Positions 12,865 through 19,680 of a DNA stretch of 64,000 nt are shown here, in pieces; the first letter of the stretch is position 1; every line of letters starts with the position of its first letter. Both the position numbers and the translations under genes were made by a program. The stretch spans positions 62,001 through 126,000 of the IMG/VR virus record IMGVR_UViG_3300034104_005687. One strand, 5' to 3'. Under the pieces are notes generated by a model. That model was not told the DNA's origin and did no database searches. It saw only the letters and a program-made list of their open reading frames with translations.

Positions 12865-13899
12865 TCAATAGTTGGCCACTGGATGTGTGTTGGGTTCTAG
12901 CAATTTGTGCAAGTCTTGTGTGTTGTTTGGAAACTTTGACAATTTCCAAGTTTTGAGATTTAGATTGTGTTGATATATCAAACAGTGCTGTATCACTACT
13001 TCTTGATCAAATGTTAGATCAATCTCGTAATACCAGTTGTTGACAATGCTGTCAACTATGTGCTGATAATTGTAACAGAAACTCAGCAAATTCAATTGTT
13101 TGGTTTGCCACTTTGCGTATATGGGTCTCCATGCTGCTAATCTTTCTGATACCATCTCTAAACTCAAATAGTTCAACATCTTTTGAACCGCTTGCTCGCC
13201 GCGGTACCACAACTCCTGGCAGTTGATCCACAAGTGAGGATATGTCATATTTTTTAAATATAACTCTTGATAGTAAAAAGGTCTTGAATCTAGTGCCTGT
13301 TGTTCTCGTTGGTCCCATATATCTGTTAGTCCTAAGTCTGTCCACGAGTCGATGCTGTCTTTAAAAAATAATTCTTGACGGTGCTGTTTTAATTCTCTGA
13401 CACTGTTGTATGGTTGATGATCAATTGTTTCTCCTTCTAATGCTCGCGGTTCTAAATGGTACAGTTGAATATTTGGATGATTTCCAATGTATATTAACTT
13501 TGCATTGCGAAGATTGCAAAATTCAAACACTTGATCAAAGTCTTGACTTATGTATTGAAAAATTTGTGATCTAACAGAAGGTATACCAATATCAGATATT
13601 GGTATATTTTTTTCATCTACTGCAACAACAAGTTTCAATGGGTATGGGTATGCGGAATACAGTTGGTGTTGCGGCATGGACAACAAGGACTCTATAAATT
13701 TTTGTGTGTTAACAAAGCCCATGGGATGATTTTTTTTATACCCATGGGCATTGAGTTCTTGCACAGGATCATTGGGCAATTCCAACCACTGTTGTTGATG
13801 TATATTGTAGTGATGTGTCTGCCCGGACAAGAAATGAATAGACCAATCAAAAAAAGTGCACCCTACTGGGTATGCACTAGTAATGCAATACACACTCAT
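12865..13899 (-). CDS. Hypothetical protein, possibly sulfotransferase-like fold
   Basis: 344 aa; N-terminal strand plus GCTFFDW resembles the sulfotransferase PAPS loop; weak. Confidence 0.5.
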   Translation of the reverse strand: MSVYCITSAYPVGCTFFDWSIHFLSGQTHHYNIHQQQWLELPNDPVQELNAHGYKKNHPMGFVNTQKFIESLLSMPQHQLYSAYPYPLKLVVAVDEKNIPISDIGIPSVRSQIFQYISQDFDQVFEFCNLRNAKLIYIGNHPNIQLYHLEPRALEGETIDHQPYNSVRELKQHRQELFFKDSIDSWTDLGLTDIWDQREQQALDSRPFYYQELYLKNMTYPHLWINCQELWYRGEQAVQKMLNYLSLEMVSERLAAWRPIYAKWQTKQLNLLSFCYNYQHIVDSIVNNWYYEIDLTFDQEVVIQHCLIYQHNLNLKTWKLSKFPNNTQDLHKLLEPNTHPVANY

Positions 13900-14231
13900 A
13901 AATTTTGATCAGGCCAGTCCCTAAACAAAGCATGCTGGATGTCACCTGCTACAAACTGATTGAAGCTACGGTGTTTGGTTTCCAGTTCGCCTTCCAATGG
14001 TGCTACCCTCTTGAAAGCACTGTCCATTTGAGCCATGTCTGTAAACTCCATAAGTATCATCCATTCAGGCATGTCTGCTATGCTACGAAAACCCATCTTG
14101 CAGCGTGTGATACGATAGTTTTCCAGTTTGCCCTCAGACTTCAGATGATCAAAAAAGCTCTTCATTCCGTTGACCCATTCAAGGTCTGAAATGTCTCCGG
14201 CCTTGTTGGCCCATATTGTGTAGATGTCCAT
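13896..14231 (-). CDS. DUF6614-like small alpha/beta barrel protein
   Basis: MDIYTIW...HLKSEG...RITRCKMG...EF.DMAQMDSAF...ALFRDWPD pattern. Confidence 0.6.
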   Translation of the reverse strand: MDIYTIWANKAGDISDLEWVNGMKSFFDHLKSEGKLENYRITRCKMGFRSIADMPEWMILMEFTDMAQMDSAFKRVAPLEGELETKHRSFNQFVAGDIQHALFRDWPDQNL

Positions 14232-14668: not shown

Positions 14669-15168
14669 GTGCGCGGATCCTGACGATGCTGAAACAGGGA
14701 CTGCAAGTAATCTTCAGGCCATGTGTCATAGAATCCTTTGCGTGCCATAAGCTGAGCCTTGGTGTTTAGGTCGCTGACACTTTGTACCAAGGCCAGTGCA
14801 TAGGTTCCTTGATTCATGCAAACTCCGTTGACTATTTCAACATCTTTGGGATGATCTTCTAAGGCCAATAAATCAGCAGCCAACAAAAAATCTTTGTTGG
14901 CATGATCAAGGCTGCTGGCAAACAGGTCATGAGACCATTGATCAGGATCGTATGCATATATTATGACTTCGCTGAGGCCTATACCATGCCGTGCACGATG
15001 TTTGAGATCATAGTATGGGTCAGTGCCCAAGAATACCTGATAGCTATTTTTGAGTCTTGCACTGCGAGCATACGGACACGGAGAAAACCCTCCCAGGGCG
15101 GGATGCGGAACTTCCACAAAGTTCACAATCCAGCGTTCTATGTCTTGTTTTACAGTTTCTAAGTTCAT
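14665..15168 (-). CDS. DUF1415/DUF6875-like protein
   Basis: WIVNFVE.PHP.LGG.SPCPYAR and later DHP motif. Confidence 0.5.
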   Translation of the reverse strand: MNLETVKQDIERWIVNFVEVPHPALGGFSPCPYARSARLKNSYQVFLGTDPYYDLKHRARHGIGLSEVIIYAYDPDQWSHDLFASSLDHANKDFLLAADLLALEDHPKDVEIVNGVCMNQGTYALALVQSVSDLNTKAQLMARKGFYDTWPEDYLQSLFQHRQDPRT

Positions 15169-15344
15169 TAAAAATAAGGCAGCCCAGATTTTTTGGTTGT
15201 TTCCAAATTGCTTTTGATCAATTCGGCAATGCTTTCTCGATCACGATAACTCAACTGCATGGCTTGATCCAAAGTGATACCACCACGCATGCTCCAGCAA
15301 ATCCTGAACATTTCGTCCTTGATCTGCTTGGCCTCCTTTTCCAT
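15168..15344 (-). CDS. gp51-like baseplate hub/tail assembly chaperone (58 aa; probably also made as a frameshift fusion)
   Basis: Missed by ORF track: MEKEAKQIKDEMFRICWSMRGGITLDQAMQLSYRDRESIAELIKSNLETTKKSGLPYF; frame is open back to 15404. Confidence 0.75.
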   Translation of the reverse strand: MEKEAKQIKDEMFRICWSMRGGITLDQAMQLSYRDRESIAELIKSNLETTKKSGLPYF

Positions 15345-15382
15345 TTTATCAACAGTGTTGACAACCTGTTCGTTGTCTTGGA

Positions 15383-16219
15383 TCAGGAGGCGCCCGCGAA
15401 AAAATCAGTCATGTTCAGGGTAAATGGTTGATCGTATTGATGATTACAGTTGCTGCACTGAATGTGCATGGGTTGCAATTCACTTTTTTGCTTGTTGGCA
15501 ATGATAAAATCTCTGATCTGGCCAAACATGTTGCGATCGCAGTTGCCCAGCCATTCTGCAATGTGTTCTTCGTTGGAAACTTGTGCAGTGGGTGTCTTGA
15601 CCAGGGCAATACTTTGAGCCAGTGCTCGGGTAGTGATATTGTTGATTTTTTTCAGCACGTCGGACAACTGTTTCACACGATCTTTGTTTTCTGGATCCAT
15701 CTCAGTCAAGGACTGCAGGGCACGTTGTTCTTCAAACTGAGTCAGTGAATTTTCATTCATTTGTTTGTAGCTCATGGGTTGAAAATAAATTTCCAAATCT
15801 CCAATTTTCAAACTTTGTGAGTAATCCATGCCCTGGATATTGCTGAGAACCTGTGTGAGATTCATGGTATATTCTGTTTCTGTTTCGCATCCAGGGCAGG
15901 TAGAATTGATGTCAAGATCGTTGCCATAGGTAGCAATGCGTATGGCCACCAGCATGGTATCTAGATCAACGTTGGGCACAGCCCAGGCATCTTTGATGTT
16001 GGGAATACAGCTCTCAATCACACTGCACACTGATTGCCCATTGAACAAGGCATCGGGTGTACGATATGTGATTTCGTCCATGGTGGTCATGGGTAACACA
16101 GGATATTCGCCGTTGACTGTGTGCTCAATGGCGTTGGCAGGGTAAAATTTGCCCTGACTGGGCAACCGAATAAAGATAGCGGGTTGCCTAAAGTATTGAC
16201 TCAAGGGATTGGAATTCAT
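15383..16219 (-). CDS. gp26-like baseplate hub assembly protein
   Basis: LPSQG, PMTTMDE, AIRIATYG, CPGC and CSNC zinc pairs, terminal DFF. Confidence 0.75.
   Translation of the reverse strand: MNSNPLSQYFRQPAIFIRLPSQGKFYPANAIEHTVNGEYPVLPMTTMDEITYRTPDALFNGQSVCSVIESCIPNIKDAWAVPNVDLDTMLVAIRIATYGNDLDINSTCPGCETETEYTMNLTQVLSNIQGMDYSQSLKIGDLEIYFQPMSYKQMNENSLTQFEEQRALQSLTEMDPENKDRVKQLSDVLKKINNITTRALAQSIALVKTPTAQVSNEEHIAEWLGNCDRNMFGQIRDFIIANKQKSELQPMHIQCSNCNHQYDQPFTLNMTDFFAGAS
15398..15404 (-). other. Putative -1 programmed ribosomal frameshift site T TTT TTC
   Basis: GAT TTT TTC near end of gp26-like ORF; the -1 frame opens exactly here and runs into the gp51-like ORF. Confidence 0.7.
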
Positions 16220-16233
16220 GGATTTTCTCGCGG

Positions 16234-16257
16234 TAAATATGACTATAACTATTTATA
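16234..16257. promoter_or_regulatory. Pair of face-to-face late promoters (TAAATA plus, TATAAATA minus)
   Basis: TAAATA 16234-16239 (+) and TATAAATA 16250-16257 (-) in the 50-nt gap between divergent genes. Confidence 0.65.
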
Positions 16258-16269
16258 GGCCGCAAAAAC

Positions 16270-19200
16270 ATGGATCAAGAATTAAGAGACCTAGTTGAAC
16301 AGATGCGTCAACTGATTCCGGTGCTGCAAGGAATGAGCAAACCTCCTGGCGCAACTGTGGACAGCCCTGCTGACAAAATGACTCGAGGTGTAGATCGAAT
16401 GGTTGTGGCCCTGGGTCAACTAGCAGTCAAATTGGATACTACCAAAAAGACACGTCGTGACGAAGAAGAAGCTGTCAAAAAGTTTGCCAAAGCAGTGGAA
16501 AAAACTGCAGATAACATAGAAGAAGAAAACAAAGAACGCCAAAAAGTCACTGATGCTTTGGAAAAAGAAAGCAAGGCTCGAGAAGAAGCAATTAAGGAAG
16601 CAACTCGTAGAAACAATCTGTCGCAGCAAGGACGTGAGCAAGAAGACAAAGAAAGAGCCAAGTACGAAGCAGAACAACGCAATCGTAATACCAAACTAAG
16701 CATAGAACAAAACCGTAGGTCCTCTAGCAGCAGCAAAGATTTGTTTGATTCATTGAGCAGCACAGGGGGCAGTGCTGAGATATTGAAAAACAAGTTCTTG
16801 AATCTTGGAGGAGACAGTTTAACAGCACAGTCAGGTCTACAATTGTTCAGTGCTGGTCTCAGCGGCACCACAAAATCTTTGACCACATTTGCATCAGGCT
16901 TGATCAATGGTGAACGTGGTGCGCAACTGTCTGCCAAAGCACTCAACGATTTTGCCACACCAATATTGAACGTAGCAAGTAGTATAGGTACTTTGCTGAC
17001 GGTGTTGTCTTTTATTCCTGGTCCTGTTGGAATATTGACTCGTGGTGCCAGAATGGCAGGTGCAGCAGTGTTTGGGCTAGGATCAGCTGCTGGCAAAGCT
17101 GCACTTAAATTCAACGAGATAGGAGCCAAGCAGCTTGACACCCTGGTAAAAAGTTTCAACGACGCCAGCGGCGCAGGTGTTAGTTTAACTGGTGGACTAG
17201 AAGGCACTCTGGACCTAATGCACACGCTGAACATGACCACAGCGGATGCAGCGCAGTTTCAAGAAATGTTGAGTAAAAACAACAAGCAACTGGCCTTGTT
17301 GGGCGGAACAGCAGGTGTTGGAGCCAAGAGATTTGCTGAAGTTTCGGGTGCATTGGTCAAAAGCGATATTGGCCAAACGTTTGAAATCATGGGTATCACT
17401 CAACAAGAACAGCGAGAAGCTGCTTTGTTGTACATGAGCATTCAGGCCAGAACTGGCCAGCTGCAGTTAAAGAACACTGAAAAACTCATTGAAGAATCTG
17501 CTAGATTTGTACACGAATTAGATCAAGCAGCACAACTCACTGGCGCTACCCGACGTGAACAACAAGAAGCACGCGAAGCTGCAATGGCCGAAGTTAGATT
17601 CCGTGCAGCCTTGATAGATGCGCAGCAACGTGGCGATACCGCAGACATGGCTCAATTGAAAGTTGCTGAACGAGCAGCAGCTATTGCCAAAAGCCTAGGC
17701 GACGAAAAAGGCTTTCTTGGTATTTTGCAACAGGCAGCAGGCCAAGGAGCACTGACCACCCCAGAAGCAATAGCAGCAGAGCAAACCTACAGAATATCAG
17801 AAATACTGGCTCAGCCCAACATCACTGATCAGCAGATCCTGGAACACCTGGCCAAAAATGCTGATCTTAATTTGCAGTCATTGGCAGGTACCAACCGATT
17901 GATCGGCGGCATTGACGCATTGCAAACAGGTATTGTTGGCATGGACAATTCTGTCAAGCGTCAAAACGCACTAGCACAAGAAGCCGCCAAGGCAGGGTTC
18001 ACAGGTCCAGAAGCAATTACTAACTACCTTAAACAGGAAGAAAAGAAACGCAAACAGCCCGGCGGCGATCTTACTCTAATGGTCAGCGCAGGTCGTGCAC
18101 AGCAAGCTGCTGCACAAATCATGGAACAAGGTATTGCGACCTTTAATTCTGCAGCAGATATCAACAAAGCAGCATCCGAGGCTTTTGCAAACGCAGTTGC
18201 TATCTTTGGCTCAGCAGTGGGTGCAAACCCTGTGCCTGGCGGAACACCCACGTTTGGTGGCGTACCAGTGGAATCAGGTGTGCGTCTTCCGCCTACGCCG
18301 GAGGCTGCACAAGCCAAGGTGGATCAGGCCGATGCAAAAATTAAAGAGGTCGGGGACAAGATAAAAGAACAAGAGAAAAAGCTAGCAGAGGCCAAGACAA
18401 ATGTTGAAAAAGATAAAGCTGAAGCTGAAATTAAAAGATTGAAAAAAGAGAAGGATGATGCAGACAAGGCAAAAAATGCTGCTGATCTAGGAAAAAAAGC
18501 TGAAGAAAATAGACGTCGTCTTGAAGATGCACATAAACGTTCAAAATCAGGTGCTGCTCCAGGTAGTGCACCAGCAACCACCACACCGCCTGCTGCTCCA
18601 GGTAGTGCACCAGCAACCACCACACCGCCTGCTGCTCCGGGTAGTGCACCAGCCGCAAAGTCTGCTCCGGGTAGTGCACCAGCCGCAAAGCCTGCTGCTC
18701 CGGGTAGTGCACCAGCTGCAAAGCCTGCTGCTCCGTCTAGTGCACCAGCTGCAAAGCCTGCTGCTCCGTCTAGTGCACCAGCTGCAAAGCCTGCTGCTCC
18801 GGGTTCTACCCCAAATAATCCTGCACCTTTGCCACCAATGCCACCTGGTGCAAACCCAGCAACAGCCGAAAAGCCTACTGCATCTATTATTAAAATATTG
18901 GACCTAATAGGTCGTGCAGAAAGTCGCGGCAACTACAACGTATTGGTTGGGGGAGAAATAAACCCCGACTTAACCAATATGACTATTGCAGAAGTTCAGG
19001 ATTTTCAAGGTAAAATGGTTCGTGCAGGACATGAGAGCACAGCAGTTGGAAAGTATCAAATAATACAAGAAACACTCCGTACCTTGTTAACTCGAGGTGT
19101 AGTAAACCCAAACGAAACATTTTCTCCAAGCACACAAGACAAACTGGCCATTGCATTGCTTAATGAAAAAGGTTGGCCAAAATTTCAAAGTGGCAAGATG

Positions 19201-19680
19201 TCTGCAGACCAAATGGCCGATGCTATTGCACAAGTATGGGCAGGATTCCCGCTAGCCGACGGAATGAGTTATTATCGAGGGGTTGGAACTAACAAAGCAA
19301 CTATTAGTCGTCAGGAAGTGTTGACTGCACTAACAGACGTTCCCAAAGCCAAAGATGGTGGCATGTTCCAAGGCCCGATGTCTGGATATCCTGCTGTGTT
19401 GCATGGCAAAGAAGCAGTGATACCGCTGAAAAATGGTGCTGTGCCTGTGATGATGCCTGCCCTGGACGAACTAGTATTATCCAACAAAAACATGGAACAG
19501 CAAATGAGTGATATGCGAAAAGAAATGGCACAGGTGATGCGAGAGTTGGTCGATTCTATCCAAATAATGAAAGAAAGTGGATCTCAGCAACGCATGATTC
19601 AGTTGTTGGAAAGCATGTCTCGTAGTCAACAGACCACAGCCGTAGCCAGTCAAAGAATGGCACAGCTGGCATCAAACTAA
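16270..19680 (+). CDS. Tape-measure-like protein with C-terminal lysozyme-like domain
   Basis: 1136 aa, long helical Ala/Gln/Glu-rich body; AESRGNYN...STAVGKYQII..TL...QDKLAIALL...WAGFP muramidase motifs; C-terminal GG...GP.SGY...LHGKEAVIP. Confidence 0.75.
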   Translation: MDQELRDLVEQMRQLIPVLQGMSKPPGATVDSPADKMTRGVDRMVVALGQLAVKLDTTKKTRRDEEEAVKKFAKAVEKTADNIEEENKERQKVTDALEKESKAREEAIKEATRRNNLSQQGREQEDKERAKYEAEQRNRNTKLSIEQNRRSSSSSKDLFDSLSSTGGSAEILKNKFLNLGGDSLTAQSGLQLFSAGLSGTTKSLTTFASGLINGERGAQLSAKALNDFATPILNVASSIGTLLTVLSFIPGPVGILTRGARMAGAAVFGLGSAAGKAALKFNEIGAKQLDTLVKSFNDASGAGVSLTGGLEGTLDLMHTLNMTTADAAQFQEMLSKNNKQLALLGGTAGVGAKRFAEVSGALVKSDIGQTFEIMGITQQEQREAALLYMSIQARTGQLQLKNTEKLIEESARFVHELDQAAQLTGATRREQQEAREAAMAEVRFRAALIDAQQRGDTADMAQLKVAERAAAIAKSLGDEKGFLGILQQAAGQGALTTPEAIAAEQTYRISEILAQPNITDQQILEHLAKNADLNLQSLAGTNRLIGGIDALQTGIVGMDNSVKRQNALAQEAAKAGFTGPEAITNYLKQEEKKRKQPGGDLTLMVSAGRAQQAAAQIMEQGIATFNSAADINKAASEAFANAVAIFGSAVGANPVPGGTPTFGGVPVESGVRLPPTPEAAQAKVDQADAKIKEVGDKIKEQEKKLAEAKTNVEKDKAEAEIKRLKKEKDDADKAKNAADLGKKAEENRRRLEDAHKRSKSGAAPGSAPATTTPPAAPGSAPATTTPPAAPGSAPAAKSAPGSAPAAKPAAPGSAPAAKPAAPSSAPAAKPAAPSSAPAAKPAAPGSTPNNPAPLPPMPPGANPATAEKPTASIIKILDLIGRAESRGNYNVLVGGEINPDLTNMTIAEVQDFQGKMVRAGHESTAVGKYQIIQETLRTLLTRGVVNPNETFSPSTQDKLAIALLNEKGWPKFQSGKMSADQMADAIAQVWAGFPLADGMSYYRGVGTNKATISRQEVLTALTDVPKAKDGGMFQGPMSGYPAVLHGKEAVIPLKNGAVPVMMPALDELVLSNKNMEQQMSDMRKEMAQVMRELVDSIQIMKESGSQQRMIQLLESMSRSQQTTAVASQRMAQLASN
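18550..18810 (+). repeat. Tandem repeats encoding a Pro/Ala linker (PAAPGSAPAAK)
   Basis: Two 42-nt units then about five 30-33-nt units of ctgctccgggtagtgcaccagc-type sequence. Confidence 0.9.

What the first reader, a model, noticed from the sequence alone, without database searches (positions are those of the whole stretch)
15168..15404. Probable -1 frameshift fusing gp26-like and gp51-like ORFs (lambda G/GT-style)
Seen: gp26-like ends GAT TTT TTC GCG GGC GCC TCC TGA. T TTT TTC is an X XXY YYZ heptamer. The -1 frame has a TGA immediately before it and then reads FFRGRLLIQDNEQVVNTVDKMEKEAKQ...GLPYF to 15168; the internal ATG at 15344 has no evident RBS. The pair neighbours the tape-measure-like gene. 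Known: tail assembly chaperones of long-tailed phages use such frameshifts. Inference: these T4-like hub genes are G/GT equivalents, giving 278-aa and ~350-aa products.
Basis: partly seen in the sequence, partly recalled or inferred. Interest (0 to 1): 0.75.

Follow-up and report, generated by a model that had tools for sequence, protein, structure and literature searches.

The report
Programmed frameshift in gp26 tail-chaperone gene
A giant lake-water phage very probably makes a short (278 aa) and a long (350 aa) version of its T4 gp26-like tail-assembly protein by letting ribosomes slip back one base at a conserved TTTTTTC; the signal is real and well supported by comparison, but this trick was already reported for T4-like phages in 2022.

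Summary
On the minus strand the gp26-like gene (16219-15383) carries T TTT TTC at 15404-15398. The -1 frame opens exactly there and runs 78 codons to 15168.

Comparison supports a programmed -1 ribosomal frameshift:
- All 120 unique related one-gene loci (jumbo phages and cyanophages) keep NNT TTT TTY.
- The -1 peptide is conserved from its first residue (FFRxRLL), although the first ATG lies 3 to 38 codons later or is absent.
- A 10-16 bp stem starts 4-6 nt after the heptamer and shows compensatory changes.
- Some lineages instead carry two genes, a short form followed by an in-frame fusion. T4 does the same: its gp51 is a gp26 paralogue plus this extension.

The "G/GT-like tail assembly chaperone" reading is therefore supported in expression logic and gene neighbourhood, with a tape-measure-like gene next door. 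The protein's predicted fold matches no solved chaperone structure, and binding was not tested.

It is not new in kind. Vladimirov, Gautam and Davidson (Virology 2022) identified gp26/gp51 as the chaperones of T4-like phages. I could not read that paper. This locus is a new member. The covarying stem and the reach into jumbo phages may be additions.

The parts
15383..16219 (-). Zero-frame gene for the short product (278 aa), gp26-like / TAC-N. It carries a four-Cys motif (C108, C111, C255, C258) and ends ...DFFAGAS*.
   Evidence: ORF. PF12322 at E 2.4e-17; phrog_150. AlphaFold model with pLDDT 87. BFVD fold neighbours are T4-like baseplate hub assembly proteins.
15398..15404 (-). Slippery heptamer T TTT TTC (X XXY YYZ). 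Both P-site and A-site codons are Phe.
   Evidence: TTTTTTC in 119 of 120 unique one-gene relatives and TTTTTTT in the other; the T run is exactly 6 followed by C in 119 of 120.
15405..15407 (-). TGA in the -1 frame directly before the heptamer, so the -1 ORF opens exactly at the slip site.
15392..15397 (-). 6-nt spacer (GCGGGC) between the heptamer and the stem.
   Evidence: The same 6-nt spacing (stem starting at column 14) is seen in alignments A1 and A2.
15331..15391 (-). Predicted stimulatory RNA structure. The 5' arm GCCUCCU (15391-15385, overlapping the zero-frame stop) pairs with AGGAGGC (15337-15331). An inner helix UCCA (15382-15379) pairs with UGGA (15343-15340) and sequesters the internal AUG at 15344.
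   Evidence: MFE -27.9 kcal/mol, z -3.1, 0 of 200 shuffles as stable. Duplex energy -20.0 kcal/mol against a control median of -6.8. Homologous stems show compensatory changes in sister clades.
15168..15404 (-). -1 frame extension: 78 codons plus TAA, FFRGRLLIQ...WSMRGG...NLETTKKSGLPYF. This is the C-terminal part of the long product, which is 350 aa in total (residues 1-274 of the zero frame plus 76 new residues).
   Evidence: The family alignment is conserved from residue 1. 486 relatives at E<=1e-3, including natural in-frame fusions. The part is helical in the model of a natural fusion.
16270..19680 (+). Divergently transcribed 1136-aa tape-measure-like protein with a muramidase-like C-terminal region. 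It is the likely client of the chaperone pair.
   Evidence: tblastn hits to lysozyme/muramidase for residues about 870-1090. The nearest language-model clusters are tape-measure families, score 0.91, a lead only. The positional orthologues are annotated TMP-like or pb2 in RaK2 and fEgEco12.

Best explanation
The gp26-like gene is decoded in two ways. Most ribosomes read GAT TTT TTC GCG GGC GCC TCC TGA and release a 278-aa protein. A fraction pause over T TTT TTC (15404-15398) because a stem starting 6 nt downstream resists unwinding. The two tRNA-Phe then re-pair one base back (UUU and UUC become UUU and UUU), and translation continues in the -1 frame for 76 more codons. This gives a 350-aa protein with the same first 274 residues and a helical C-terminal extension. 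The two forms correspond to T4 gp26 (short) and T4 gp51 (long), which T4 encodes as two separate genes.

By analogy with lambda G/GT, and by the published assignment for T4-like phages, they would act as a tail-assembly chaperone pair for the neighbouring tape-measure-like protein during hub and tail-tube assembly.

Shown here by comparison: the signal, the two reading frames, the selection acting on them, and the natural existence of the long form. Inferred only: the ribosomal nature of the shift, its efficiency, and the chaperone activity with its binding partners.
For: (1) Heptamer. All 53 unique jumbo-phage-type loci have NNT TTT TTY in phase (19 clusters below 50% aa identity; isolates include PA5oct, 121Q, RaK2, CBB, XaC1, Atu_ph07, Phosso and SCTP-2). 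So do all 80 cyanophage-type loci. The preceding codon varies (AAT, AGT, GAT, CAT, ACT, GCT, CGT, TCT), but its wobble base is always T. Background NNT use is 59% and TTC makes up 26% of Phe codons. The chance that all 19 clusters carry the wobble T is about 4e-5, and the second Phe codon is TTC in 18 of 19.

(2) The extension is coding from the slip site. Alignment A3 is conserved from residue 1 (FFRxRLL). The first ATG sits at codon 3 to 38 depending on the locus, and PA5oct has no ATG, GTG or TTG in all 75 codons. In 61 of 80 cyanophage loci the first ATG is at codon 21, after conserved residues.

(3) RNA stem. The 5' arm starts 4-6 nt after the heptamer. Median duplex energy is -16.6 kcal/mol against -6.8 at 1597 control anchors (Mann-Whitney p 8e-24). 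In A2, 94.5% of cells are paired, 7 of 10 pairs have compensatory changes, 0 of 500 shuffles reach this, and slid controls give 34-51%. In A1, 90.7% are paired against 25-60%. The window's own fold is -27.9 kcal/mol, z -3.1.

(4) Natural fusions. Twenty of the best 150 hits to the extension profile are 319-351-aa proteins that carry the extension in frame at their C-terminus, with the junction NF-RxK(I/L)(L/I). In 5 of 5 loci with enough upstream DNA, a short PF12322 paralogue sits directly upstream.

(5) T4. gp51 matches PF12322 over residues 1-201 (E 4e-52) and the cyanophage-gp51 family phrog_634 over 147-246. T4 gp26 and gp51 are paralogues. An HMM built from in-silico -1 fusions of cyanophage gp26 and gp51 aligns to T4 gp51 as one domain straight across the junction, whereas T4 gp26 stops at the junction.

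(6) Natural control. In two-gene lineages the heptamer is relaxed in 3 of 6 (T4 GAG TTC TTT; L239 GAC TTC TTT; L243 AAT TTC TTT).

(7) Context. The gene order is tube, gp26, gp51, large protein in a cyanophage, and sheath, tube, gp26, small ORF, TMP in Flavobacterium phage immuto. A TMP-like gene is adjacent here and in RaK2.

(8) Literature. gp26 and gp51 have been proposed as chaperones or cofactors (PMC9024508). The TAC genes of T4-like phages were identified by Vladimirov et al. 2022, as cited in PMC10274946 and PMC12846349.
Against: There is no direct evidence for this phage: no peptide, ribosome-profiling, reporter or RNA data.

A run of six T could in principle also support transcriptional slippage, which would give the same protein. 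[quoted passage not shown]

In the window's own clade the stem is not kept by every member. L007, L014 and L015 have weak stems, and RNAalifold finds no consensus. The enterobacterial jumbo phages also have weak stems.

The predicted fold of the gp26-like domain has no neighbour among solved structures, solved tail chaperones included. Sequence similarity of this window's extension to cyanophage or T4 gp51 is not significant.

The homologue in phage CBB is annotated 'structural protein', which fits poorly with a chaperone absent from virions.
Confidence: 0.85

Rival explanations
1. Transcriptional slippage. RNA polymerase inserts one extra U in the U6 run in a fraction of transcripts, so that ordinary translation of those mRNAs yields the same 350-aa protein.
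For: The conserved element is a homopolymer run. The product would be identical. The title of Vladimirov et al. 2022 points to a non-translational mechanism for T4-like chaperone genes, although the citing text in PMC10274946 describes this as separate short and fused genes.
Against: The run is exactly six T followed by C in 119 of 120 unique loci and is never lengthened. Known bacterial slippage sites need longer runs (general knowledge; Atkins et al. 2016 is listed). The run is always in X XXY YYZ phase. A covarying stem begins 6 nt downstream, which is the geometry that stalls a ribosome and not one known to promote polymerase slippage. No RNA data could be examined.
Confidence: 0.08
2. There is no recoding. 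The downstream ORF is an independent small gene (58 aa from ATG 15344, or started by re-initiation after the gp26 stop), as current database annotations of the relatives imply.
For: Several records annotate such a small CDS (Phosso, 121Q, CBB, XaC1, and cyanophage 'gp51'). A few loci have an ATG overlapping the gp26 stop (ATGA in Phosso, Atu_ph07, L047 and L048).
Against: The 20 codons before ATG 15344 are conserved as protein. The first ATG moves between codons 3 and 38, and PA5oct has no start codon at all. There is no RBS before 15344, and that AUG lies inside the stem. The -1 frame opens exactly at the heptamer. Natural in-frame fusions and T4 gp51 show that the extension functions attached to a gp26-like domain.
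Confidence: 0.05
3. Artefact or decay. The two frames result from an assembly error in the homopolymer, or from a recent frameshift mutation that broke a single 350-aa gene.
For: Homopolymer runs are error-prone, and single-frame 319-351-aa versions do exist in other lineages.
Against: Contigs from four lake-water runs dated 2020-2024 are identical with no indel, though some may be the window's own source. The same two-frame layout occurs in 120 unique loci, including finished isolate genomes. Lineages with the fused gene always also keep a separate short gene, so a lone fused gene is not the functional norm.
Confidence: 0.02

Closest known systems
T4 gp26 / gp51 and the tail assembly chaperone (TAC-N / TAC-NC) genes of T4-like phages (Vladimirov, Gautam and Davidson, Virology 566:9-15, 2022; seen only through citing papers)
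   Same: Same protein family (PF12322). Same short form and long form, where the long form is the short form plus a C-terminal extension. According to PMC12846349, T4-like TAC-N genes have poly-T slip signals. According to PMC10274946, some T4-like phages instead carry a short gene plus a fused long gene, which I also found here (T4 and L238-L245).
   Different: This is an uncultured freshwater jumbo phage of 349 kb, about 30% identical to the RaK2, PA5oct and Atu_ph07 homologues and only distantly related to T4. Its extension belongs to a different sequence family (WYMRGG...NLETTKKSGLPFF) from the cyanophage and T4 gp51 tail. I do not know whether the 2022 paper covers jumbo phages, or the covarying downstream stem, or which mechanism it favours.
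Lambda gpG / gpGT and the conserved -1 frameshift of long-tailed phage tail assembly genes (Xu, Hendrix and Duda, Mol Cell 2004; cited)
   Same: Two products share an N-terminus and are made by a -1 slip on an X XXY YYZ heptamer near the end of the upstream ORF. The pair lies next to the tape measure gene. The short form is presumably in excess.
   Different: The protein is twice the size of gpG (278 aa against about 140 aa) and has a different predicted fold with no solved neighbour. The heptamer is U UUU UUC rather than G GGA AAG. Here the tape-measure-like gene is divergent rather than immediately downstream. Absence from virions and binding to TMP and tube are untested.
TAC-N / TAC-NC locus of Vandenendeviridae and Andersonviridae myoviruses with an invariant GTTTTT motif (PMC12846349, 2025)
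   Same: The downstream 'hypothetical' ORF is really the C-terminal part of a -1 frameshift product. The slip site is T-rich. The argument rests on an uninterrupted -1 frame across many genomes.
   Different: Different phage families and, as far as tested, unrelated protein sequences. The motif here is a full in-phase T TTT TTC followed by a covarying stem.

Membership tests
PF12322 T4_baseplate (T4 gp26 / gp51 family) | Significant match to the family profile over most of its length | tested here: met
   E 2.4e-17, residues 61-274 against profile positions 42-218 of 219, score 63.8 against a cut-off of 24.5. phrog_150 at E 2.6e-17.
PF12322 T4_baseplate (T4 gp26 / gp51 family) | Shared fold with other family members | tested here: met
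   Model with pLDDT 87. 72 BFVD hits at E<=1e-3. The top hit is 'Baseplate hub assembly protein, bacteriophage T4-like' with TM 0.91. CP220, SP-15 and ACP17 hub proteins are also hit.
Frameshift-expressed tail assembly chaperone pair (lambda G/GT type) | Second ORF overlaps the end of the first in the -1 frame and lacks its own conserved start | tested here: met
Frameshift-expressed tail assembly chaperone pair (lambda G/GT type) | Conserved slippery heptamer X XXY YYZ in the overlap | tested here: met
   Present in 120 of 120 unique one-gene loci. Synonymous-site statistics are and the census.
Frameshift-expressed tail assembly chaperone pair (lambda G/GT type) | Gene pair located between the tail tube gene and the tape measure gene | tested here: inconclusive
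   The order is met in a cyanophage and in Flavobacterium phage immuto. In the window the TMP-like gene is adjacent but divergent, and no tube gene was found.
Frameshift-expressed tail assembly chaperone pair (lambda G/GT type) | Both the short and the long form are required | tested here: met
   The evidence is comparative only. Lineages without the frameshift encode both forms as two genes (T4, L238, L239, L242, L243, L245). No genetic test was done.
Frameshift-expressed tail assembly chaperone pair (lambda G/GT type) | Fold related to solved tail assembly chaperones | tested here: not met
   The best Foldseek match against the PDB has E 0.3. VIA-align finds only helical-hairpin matches at Z about 8. 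There is no sequence match in the PDB. The locus therefore works like G/GT but is not shown to belong to that protein family.
Frameshift-expressed tail assembly chaperone pair (lambda G/GT type) | Binds the tape measure protein (common part) and the tube protein (extension), and is absent from virions | not tested
   The tube gene of this phage was not identified and no complex prediction was run. The CBB homologue is annotated 'structural protein'.
Cyanophage / T4 gp51 C-terminal extension (phrog_634, PF28602) | Sequence similarity of the window's -1 extension to that family | tested here: inconclusive
   hhalign of A3 against A4 gives E 0.06 over 24 columns at the expected place. The gp51 HMM does not find the extension among the ORFs of the phage's own genome. 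The extension HMM gives only weak hits, though these are enriched for gp51. There is no phrog_634 hit. The equivalence rests on position, frame and size.

The most novel reading that the evidence does not exclude
The covarying stem may be an unpublished observation. It always starts 6 nt after T TTT TTC, but its 3' arm sits about 43 nt downstream in some clades and about 60 nt in others. If so, it argues that one-gene T4-like phages and jumbo phages (RaK2, PA5oct, 121Q, Atu_ph07 and cyanophages) make their gp51-type long form by true ribosomal -1 frameshifting. That would address the mechanism question raised by the title of the 2022 paper. In addition, a marine sister clade (L157-L236) appears to reach a gp51-like extension in the +1 frame through an almost invariant 48-nt dual-coding segment, which would be a second, different recoding event in the same gene family.
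Probability: 0.4. Interest if true: 0.55.

Novelty: new member of a known kind. Interest (0 to 1): 0.4.

Why it matters
Genome annotation. The long product is missing from, or mis-annotated in, every database record I looked at. RaK2 and PA5oct have no ORF called there. The other jumbo-phage records call a 'hypothetical protein'. In cyanophage relatives the first ATG often lies after conserved residues, so ATG-started 'gp51' calls are truncated. Recognising the frameshift gives these phages their gp51 equivalent.

T4 biology. It explains why T4 has two paralogous hub-assembly genes: gp26 is the short form and gp51 is the hard-wired long form.

Recoding research. The family offers 120 or more natural variants of one U UUU UUC signal with diverse stems. 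It also offers natural controls in which the signal has decayed because two genes replaced it.

The general idea, however, has been in the literature since 2022.

Tried and rejected
- Independent initiation at ATG 15344 is rejected (see the rival explanations).
- Assembly error is rejected.
- Direct homology of the window's extension to cyanophage or T4 gp51 could not be established. hhalign gives E 0.06 and 0.014 at unconvincing length, and HMM searches were negative or weak.
- An HMM of the jumbo-type in-silico fusions is too distant from T4 to align across the junction. Only the cyanophage-type HMM does so.
- RNAalifold on the window's own small clade gave no consensus structure.
- The search for the tail tube and sheath genes in the 349-kb genome found only a gp25 homologue (PF06841, PF04984, and phmmer with T4, cyanophage and Flavobacterium tube proteins). 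For that reason no extension-tube complex prediction was run.
I re-ran it with window and IMG/VR rows only.
- The search for related loci with the very divergent alignment A5 found no usable conserved stretch.
- Five paper searches for gp26, gp51 and frameshift terms found nothing relevant. A sixth only re-listed a P1 paper, which notes proposed chaperone or cofactor roles for T4 gp26 and gp51. A seventh led to the 2022 prior art, and that paper itself is not held in the library.
- Foldseek and VIA-align against the PDB gave no meaningful neighbour.
Full report
**What is there.** On the minus strand a 278-aa ORF (16219-15383) matches PF12322 T4_baseplate (E 2.4e-17) and phrog_150 'baseplate hub'. 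It ends GAT TTT TTC GCG GGC GCC TCC TGA. T TTT TTC occupies 15404-15398 in X XXY YYZ phase. The -1 frame has TGA at 15407-15405 and is then open for 78 codons (FFRGRLLIQ...GLPYF) to TAA at 15170-15168. The only ATG ORF in that frame starts at 15344 and has no Shine-Dalgarno sequence before it. A -1 slip would give a 350-aa product.

**Where the window comes from.** It is bases 62001-126000 of a 349-kb virus record estimated at 97% complete. Near-identical sequence occurs in some twenty lake-water metagenome runs. Contigs from four of them match 14900-16300 with no difference and no indel, though some runs may be the window's own source. The gene order is gp55, gp47, gp46..., gp26, then divergently a large protein, gp20 portal, gp21 and gp23. 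This equals the order in Klebsiella jumbo phage RaK2. The nearest isolates by gp26 are jumbo phages Phosso, Atu_ph07, PA5oct, 121Q, RaK2, CBB, XaC1 and SCTP-2, at 25-32% identity.

**Conservation of the signal.** tblastn with the -1 peptide hits four jumbo phages from its very first residue. IMG/VR gave 62 related loci. Together with the isolates these make 53 unique sequences in 19 clusters below 50% protein identity.
- All 53 carry NNT TTT TTC in phase (Xoo-sp13 has TTT TTT T), 3 to 12 codons before the zero-frame stop, followed by a 72-81-codon -1 ORF.
- The preceding codon encodes N, S, D, H, T, A or R but always ends in T. The first Phe codon is always TTT, and the second is TTC in 18 of 19 clusters.
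- Elsewhere in the same genes the matching synonymous T frequency is 59%, and TTC makes up 26% of Phe codons.
- Eighty cyanophage-type loci show the same heptamer 80 times out of 80.
- Over all 120 unique loci the T run is exactly six followed by C in 119.

**The -1 ORF is translated from the slip site.** The alignment of 40 extensions is conserved from residue 1 (FFRxRLL..EI...WYMRGG...NLETTKKSGLPFF). Yet the first ATG lies anywhere from codon 3 to codon 38, and PA5oct has no ATG, GTG or TTG in 75 codons. RaK2 and PA5oct records have no gene called there at all. In 61 of 80 cyanophage loci the first ATG is at codon 21, after conserved residues.

**Downstream RNA structure.**
- In the window, GCCUCCU (15391-15385, 6 nt after the heptamer) pairs with AGGAGGC (15337-15331), and UCCA pairs with UGGA. 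The fold is -27.9 kcal/mol, z -3.1. The AAGGAGG that looks like a ribosome-binding site is this 3' arm, and the internal AUG sits inside the helix.
- Across 50 unique loci (the three cut off by a contig end left out), the best duplex anchored 4-6 nt after the heptamer has a median of -16.6 kcal/mol, against -6.8 at 1597 control anchors inside the same genes (p 8e-24).
- Two sub-alignments give a 10-bp stem starting at column 14. In one clade the 3' arm is about 45 nt downstream: 90.7% of cells paired, slid controls 25-60%. In another it is about 68 nt downstream: 94.5% paired, 7 of 10 pairs with compensatory changes, 0 of 500 shuffles reaching this.
- The stem is weak in some members of the window's own clade and in the enterobacterial jumbo phages.

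**The long form exists naturally.** A profile of the extension finds 486 proteins at E<=1e-3. Twenty of the best 150 cluster representatives are 319-351 aa and carry the extension in frame at their C-terminus, with the junction ...NF-RxK(I/L)(L/I) and a single Phe. In all five loci with enough upstream DNA, a 294-319-aa PF12322 paralogue lies directly upstream. Where short and long forms were compared (L238, L239), they are about 23% identical. These lineages therefore encode the short and long forms as two genes.

T4 does the same.
- gp51 (249 aa) matches PF12322 over residues 1-201 (E 4e-52) and the cyanophage 'gp51' family over 147-246.
- gp26 and gp51 are paralogues.
- An HMM built from in-silico -1 fusions of 79 cyanophage loci aligns to T4 gp51 residues 122-244 as one domain across the junction, whereas T4 gp26 ends at the junction.

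In three of six two-gene lineages, where no slip is needed, the heptamer has decayed (T4 GAG TTC TTT, L239 GAC TTC TTT, L243 AAT TTC TTT).

**Function.**
- In a cyanophage the gene order is tube, gp26, 'gp51', large protein. In Flavobacterium phage immuto it is sheath, tube, gp26, small ORF, tape measure. This is the classical position of tail assembly chaperones.
- In the window the neighbour is a divergent 1136-aa protein. It has a muramidase-like C-terminal region, its language-model neighbours are tape-measure families, and its positional orthologues are annotated TMP-like or pb2.
- The gp26-like domain folds confidently (pLDDT 87) and resembles predicted hub-assembly proteins of many myoviruses. 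It has no neighbour among solved structures.
- In the model of a natural long form the extension is three helices (pLDDT 88).
- Chaperone activity and binding partners remain inferences.

**Prior art.** Five searches on gp26, gp51 and frameshift terms found nothing relevant. A sixth only re-listed a paper on phage P1, which notes proposed chaperone or cofactor roles for T4 gp26 and gp51. [quoted passage not shown]'.

According to PMC12846349, poly-T signals in the TAC-N genes of T4-like phages are known. According to PMC10274946, that paper shows some T4-like phages carrying a short gene plus a fused long gene. The paper itself is not held in the library. The kind of system is therefore known, and this locus is a new member in an uncultured freshwater jumbo phage. 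I cannot tell whether the covarying stem, the jumbo-phage clade or the tandem short/long lineages are already described.

**Rivals.**
- Transcriptional slippage would give the same protein. It fits poorly with a run fixed at six T, always in phase, followed by a stem at ribosome-stalling distance. No RNA data were available.
- An independent small gene is contradicted by the missing start codons.
- An artefact is contradicted by 120 independent loci.

**Verdict.** Confidence is 0.85 that a programmed -1 shift, most likely ribosomal, makes the two products. Confidence is lower, about 0.7, that they act as the tape-measure chaperone pair.

Noticed in passing
L063-L066 and L157-L236 (for example L157:1655-1702 and downstream): A marine clade of 334-aa gp26-like genes carries a gp51-like extension (..ISLENYFKTKFYLGIHLRMQPSEIENMYYYE.., compare cyanophage FFRISLFYNTLENYFRTNFSLMQHHKYSLTEIE) in the +1 frame rather than the -1 frame. 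The last 48 nt before the zero-frame stop (GGCATCAAAAGTCTTTTCATTATTTCAGATCTCGCTGGAGAATTACTTTAA) are almost invariant among the unique loci printed, which share 67-100% protein identity. The first ATG lies after conserved residues. This may be a +1 slip at CTT TTC.
   Followed up: partly
L076:2140-2450 (Flavobacterium phage immuto): The order is sheath, tube, gp26-like, small ORF, tape measure. The 'AFFG' motif and a 101-codon ORF lie in the +1 frame relative to the annotated gp26-like CDS. The annotated protein does not reach PF12322. Recoding or annotation at this locus needs a separate look.
   Followed up: no
window 15331-15344 (minus strand): AAGGAGG just after ATG 15344 looks like a ribosome-binding site. 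It is the 3' arm of the frameshift-stimulating stem, and the AUG itself is base-paired.
   Followed up: yes
window 16270-19680 (+): This 1136-aa tape-measure-like protein has residues about 870-1090 resembling phage lysozymes and muramidases. It is a tape measure with a built-in cell-wall hydrolase domain, but Pfam finds nothing at E<=0.01.
   Followed up: partly
L238, L239, L242, L243, L245: These metagenomic relatives of the jumbo-type family replace the frameshift by a tandem pair: a short gp26-like gene followed by an in-frame gp26-like-plus-extension gene. This mirrors T4 gp26/gp51 but uses the other extension family, which suggests the two-gene solution arose more than once.
   Followed up: partly
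L067:2034-2258 (PA5oct), L069:2022-2240 (RaK2), and the cyanophage loci L077-L156: Public annotations miss or truncate the extension. No CDS is called in PA5oct or RaK2. In many cyanophage relatives the first ATG lies after conserved residues, so ATG-started 'gp51' calls are truncated.
   Followed up: yes
window 15446-15898 (minus strand): The gp26-like protein has a four-Cys motif (CPGC at residues 108-111, CSNC at 255-258), probably a zinc ribbon formed by two distant hairpins. The four Cys are invariant in the natural long forms (A9) but are not the majority residue in the window's closer relatives (A6).
   Followed up: no
window 15166-15170 (minus strand): The stop of the -1 extension overlaps the start of the next gene (TAATG). 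That gene is 167 aa, matches phrog_28122 and has unknown function. Ribosomes that have shifted frame could therefore couple into the downstream gene.
   Followed up: no
window 13896-14231 (minus strand): A 111-aa DUF6614 protein (E 4e-23) lies in the same minus-strand operon, three genes downstream of the frameshift site. Its function is unknown.
   Followed up: no
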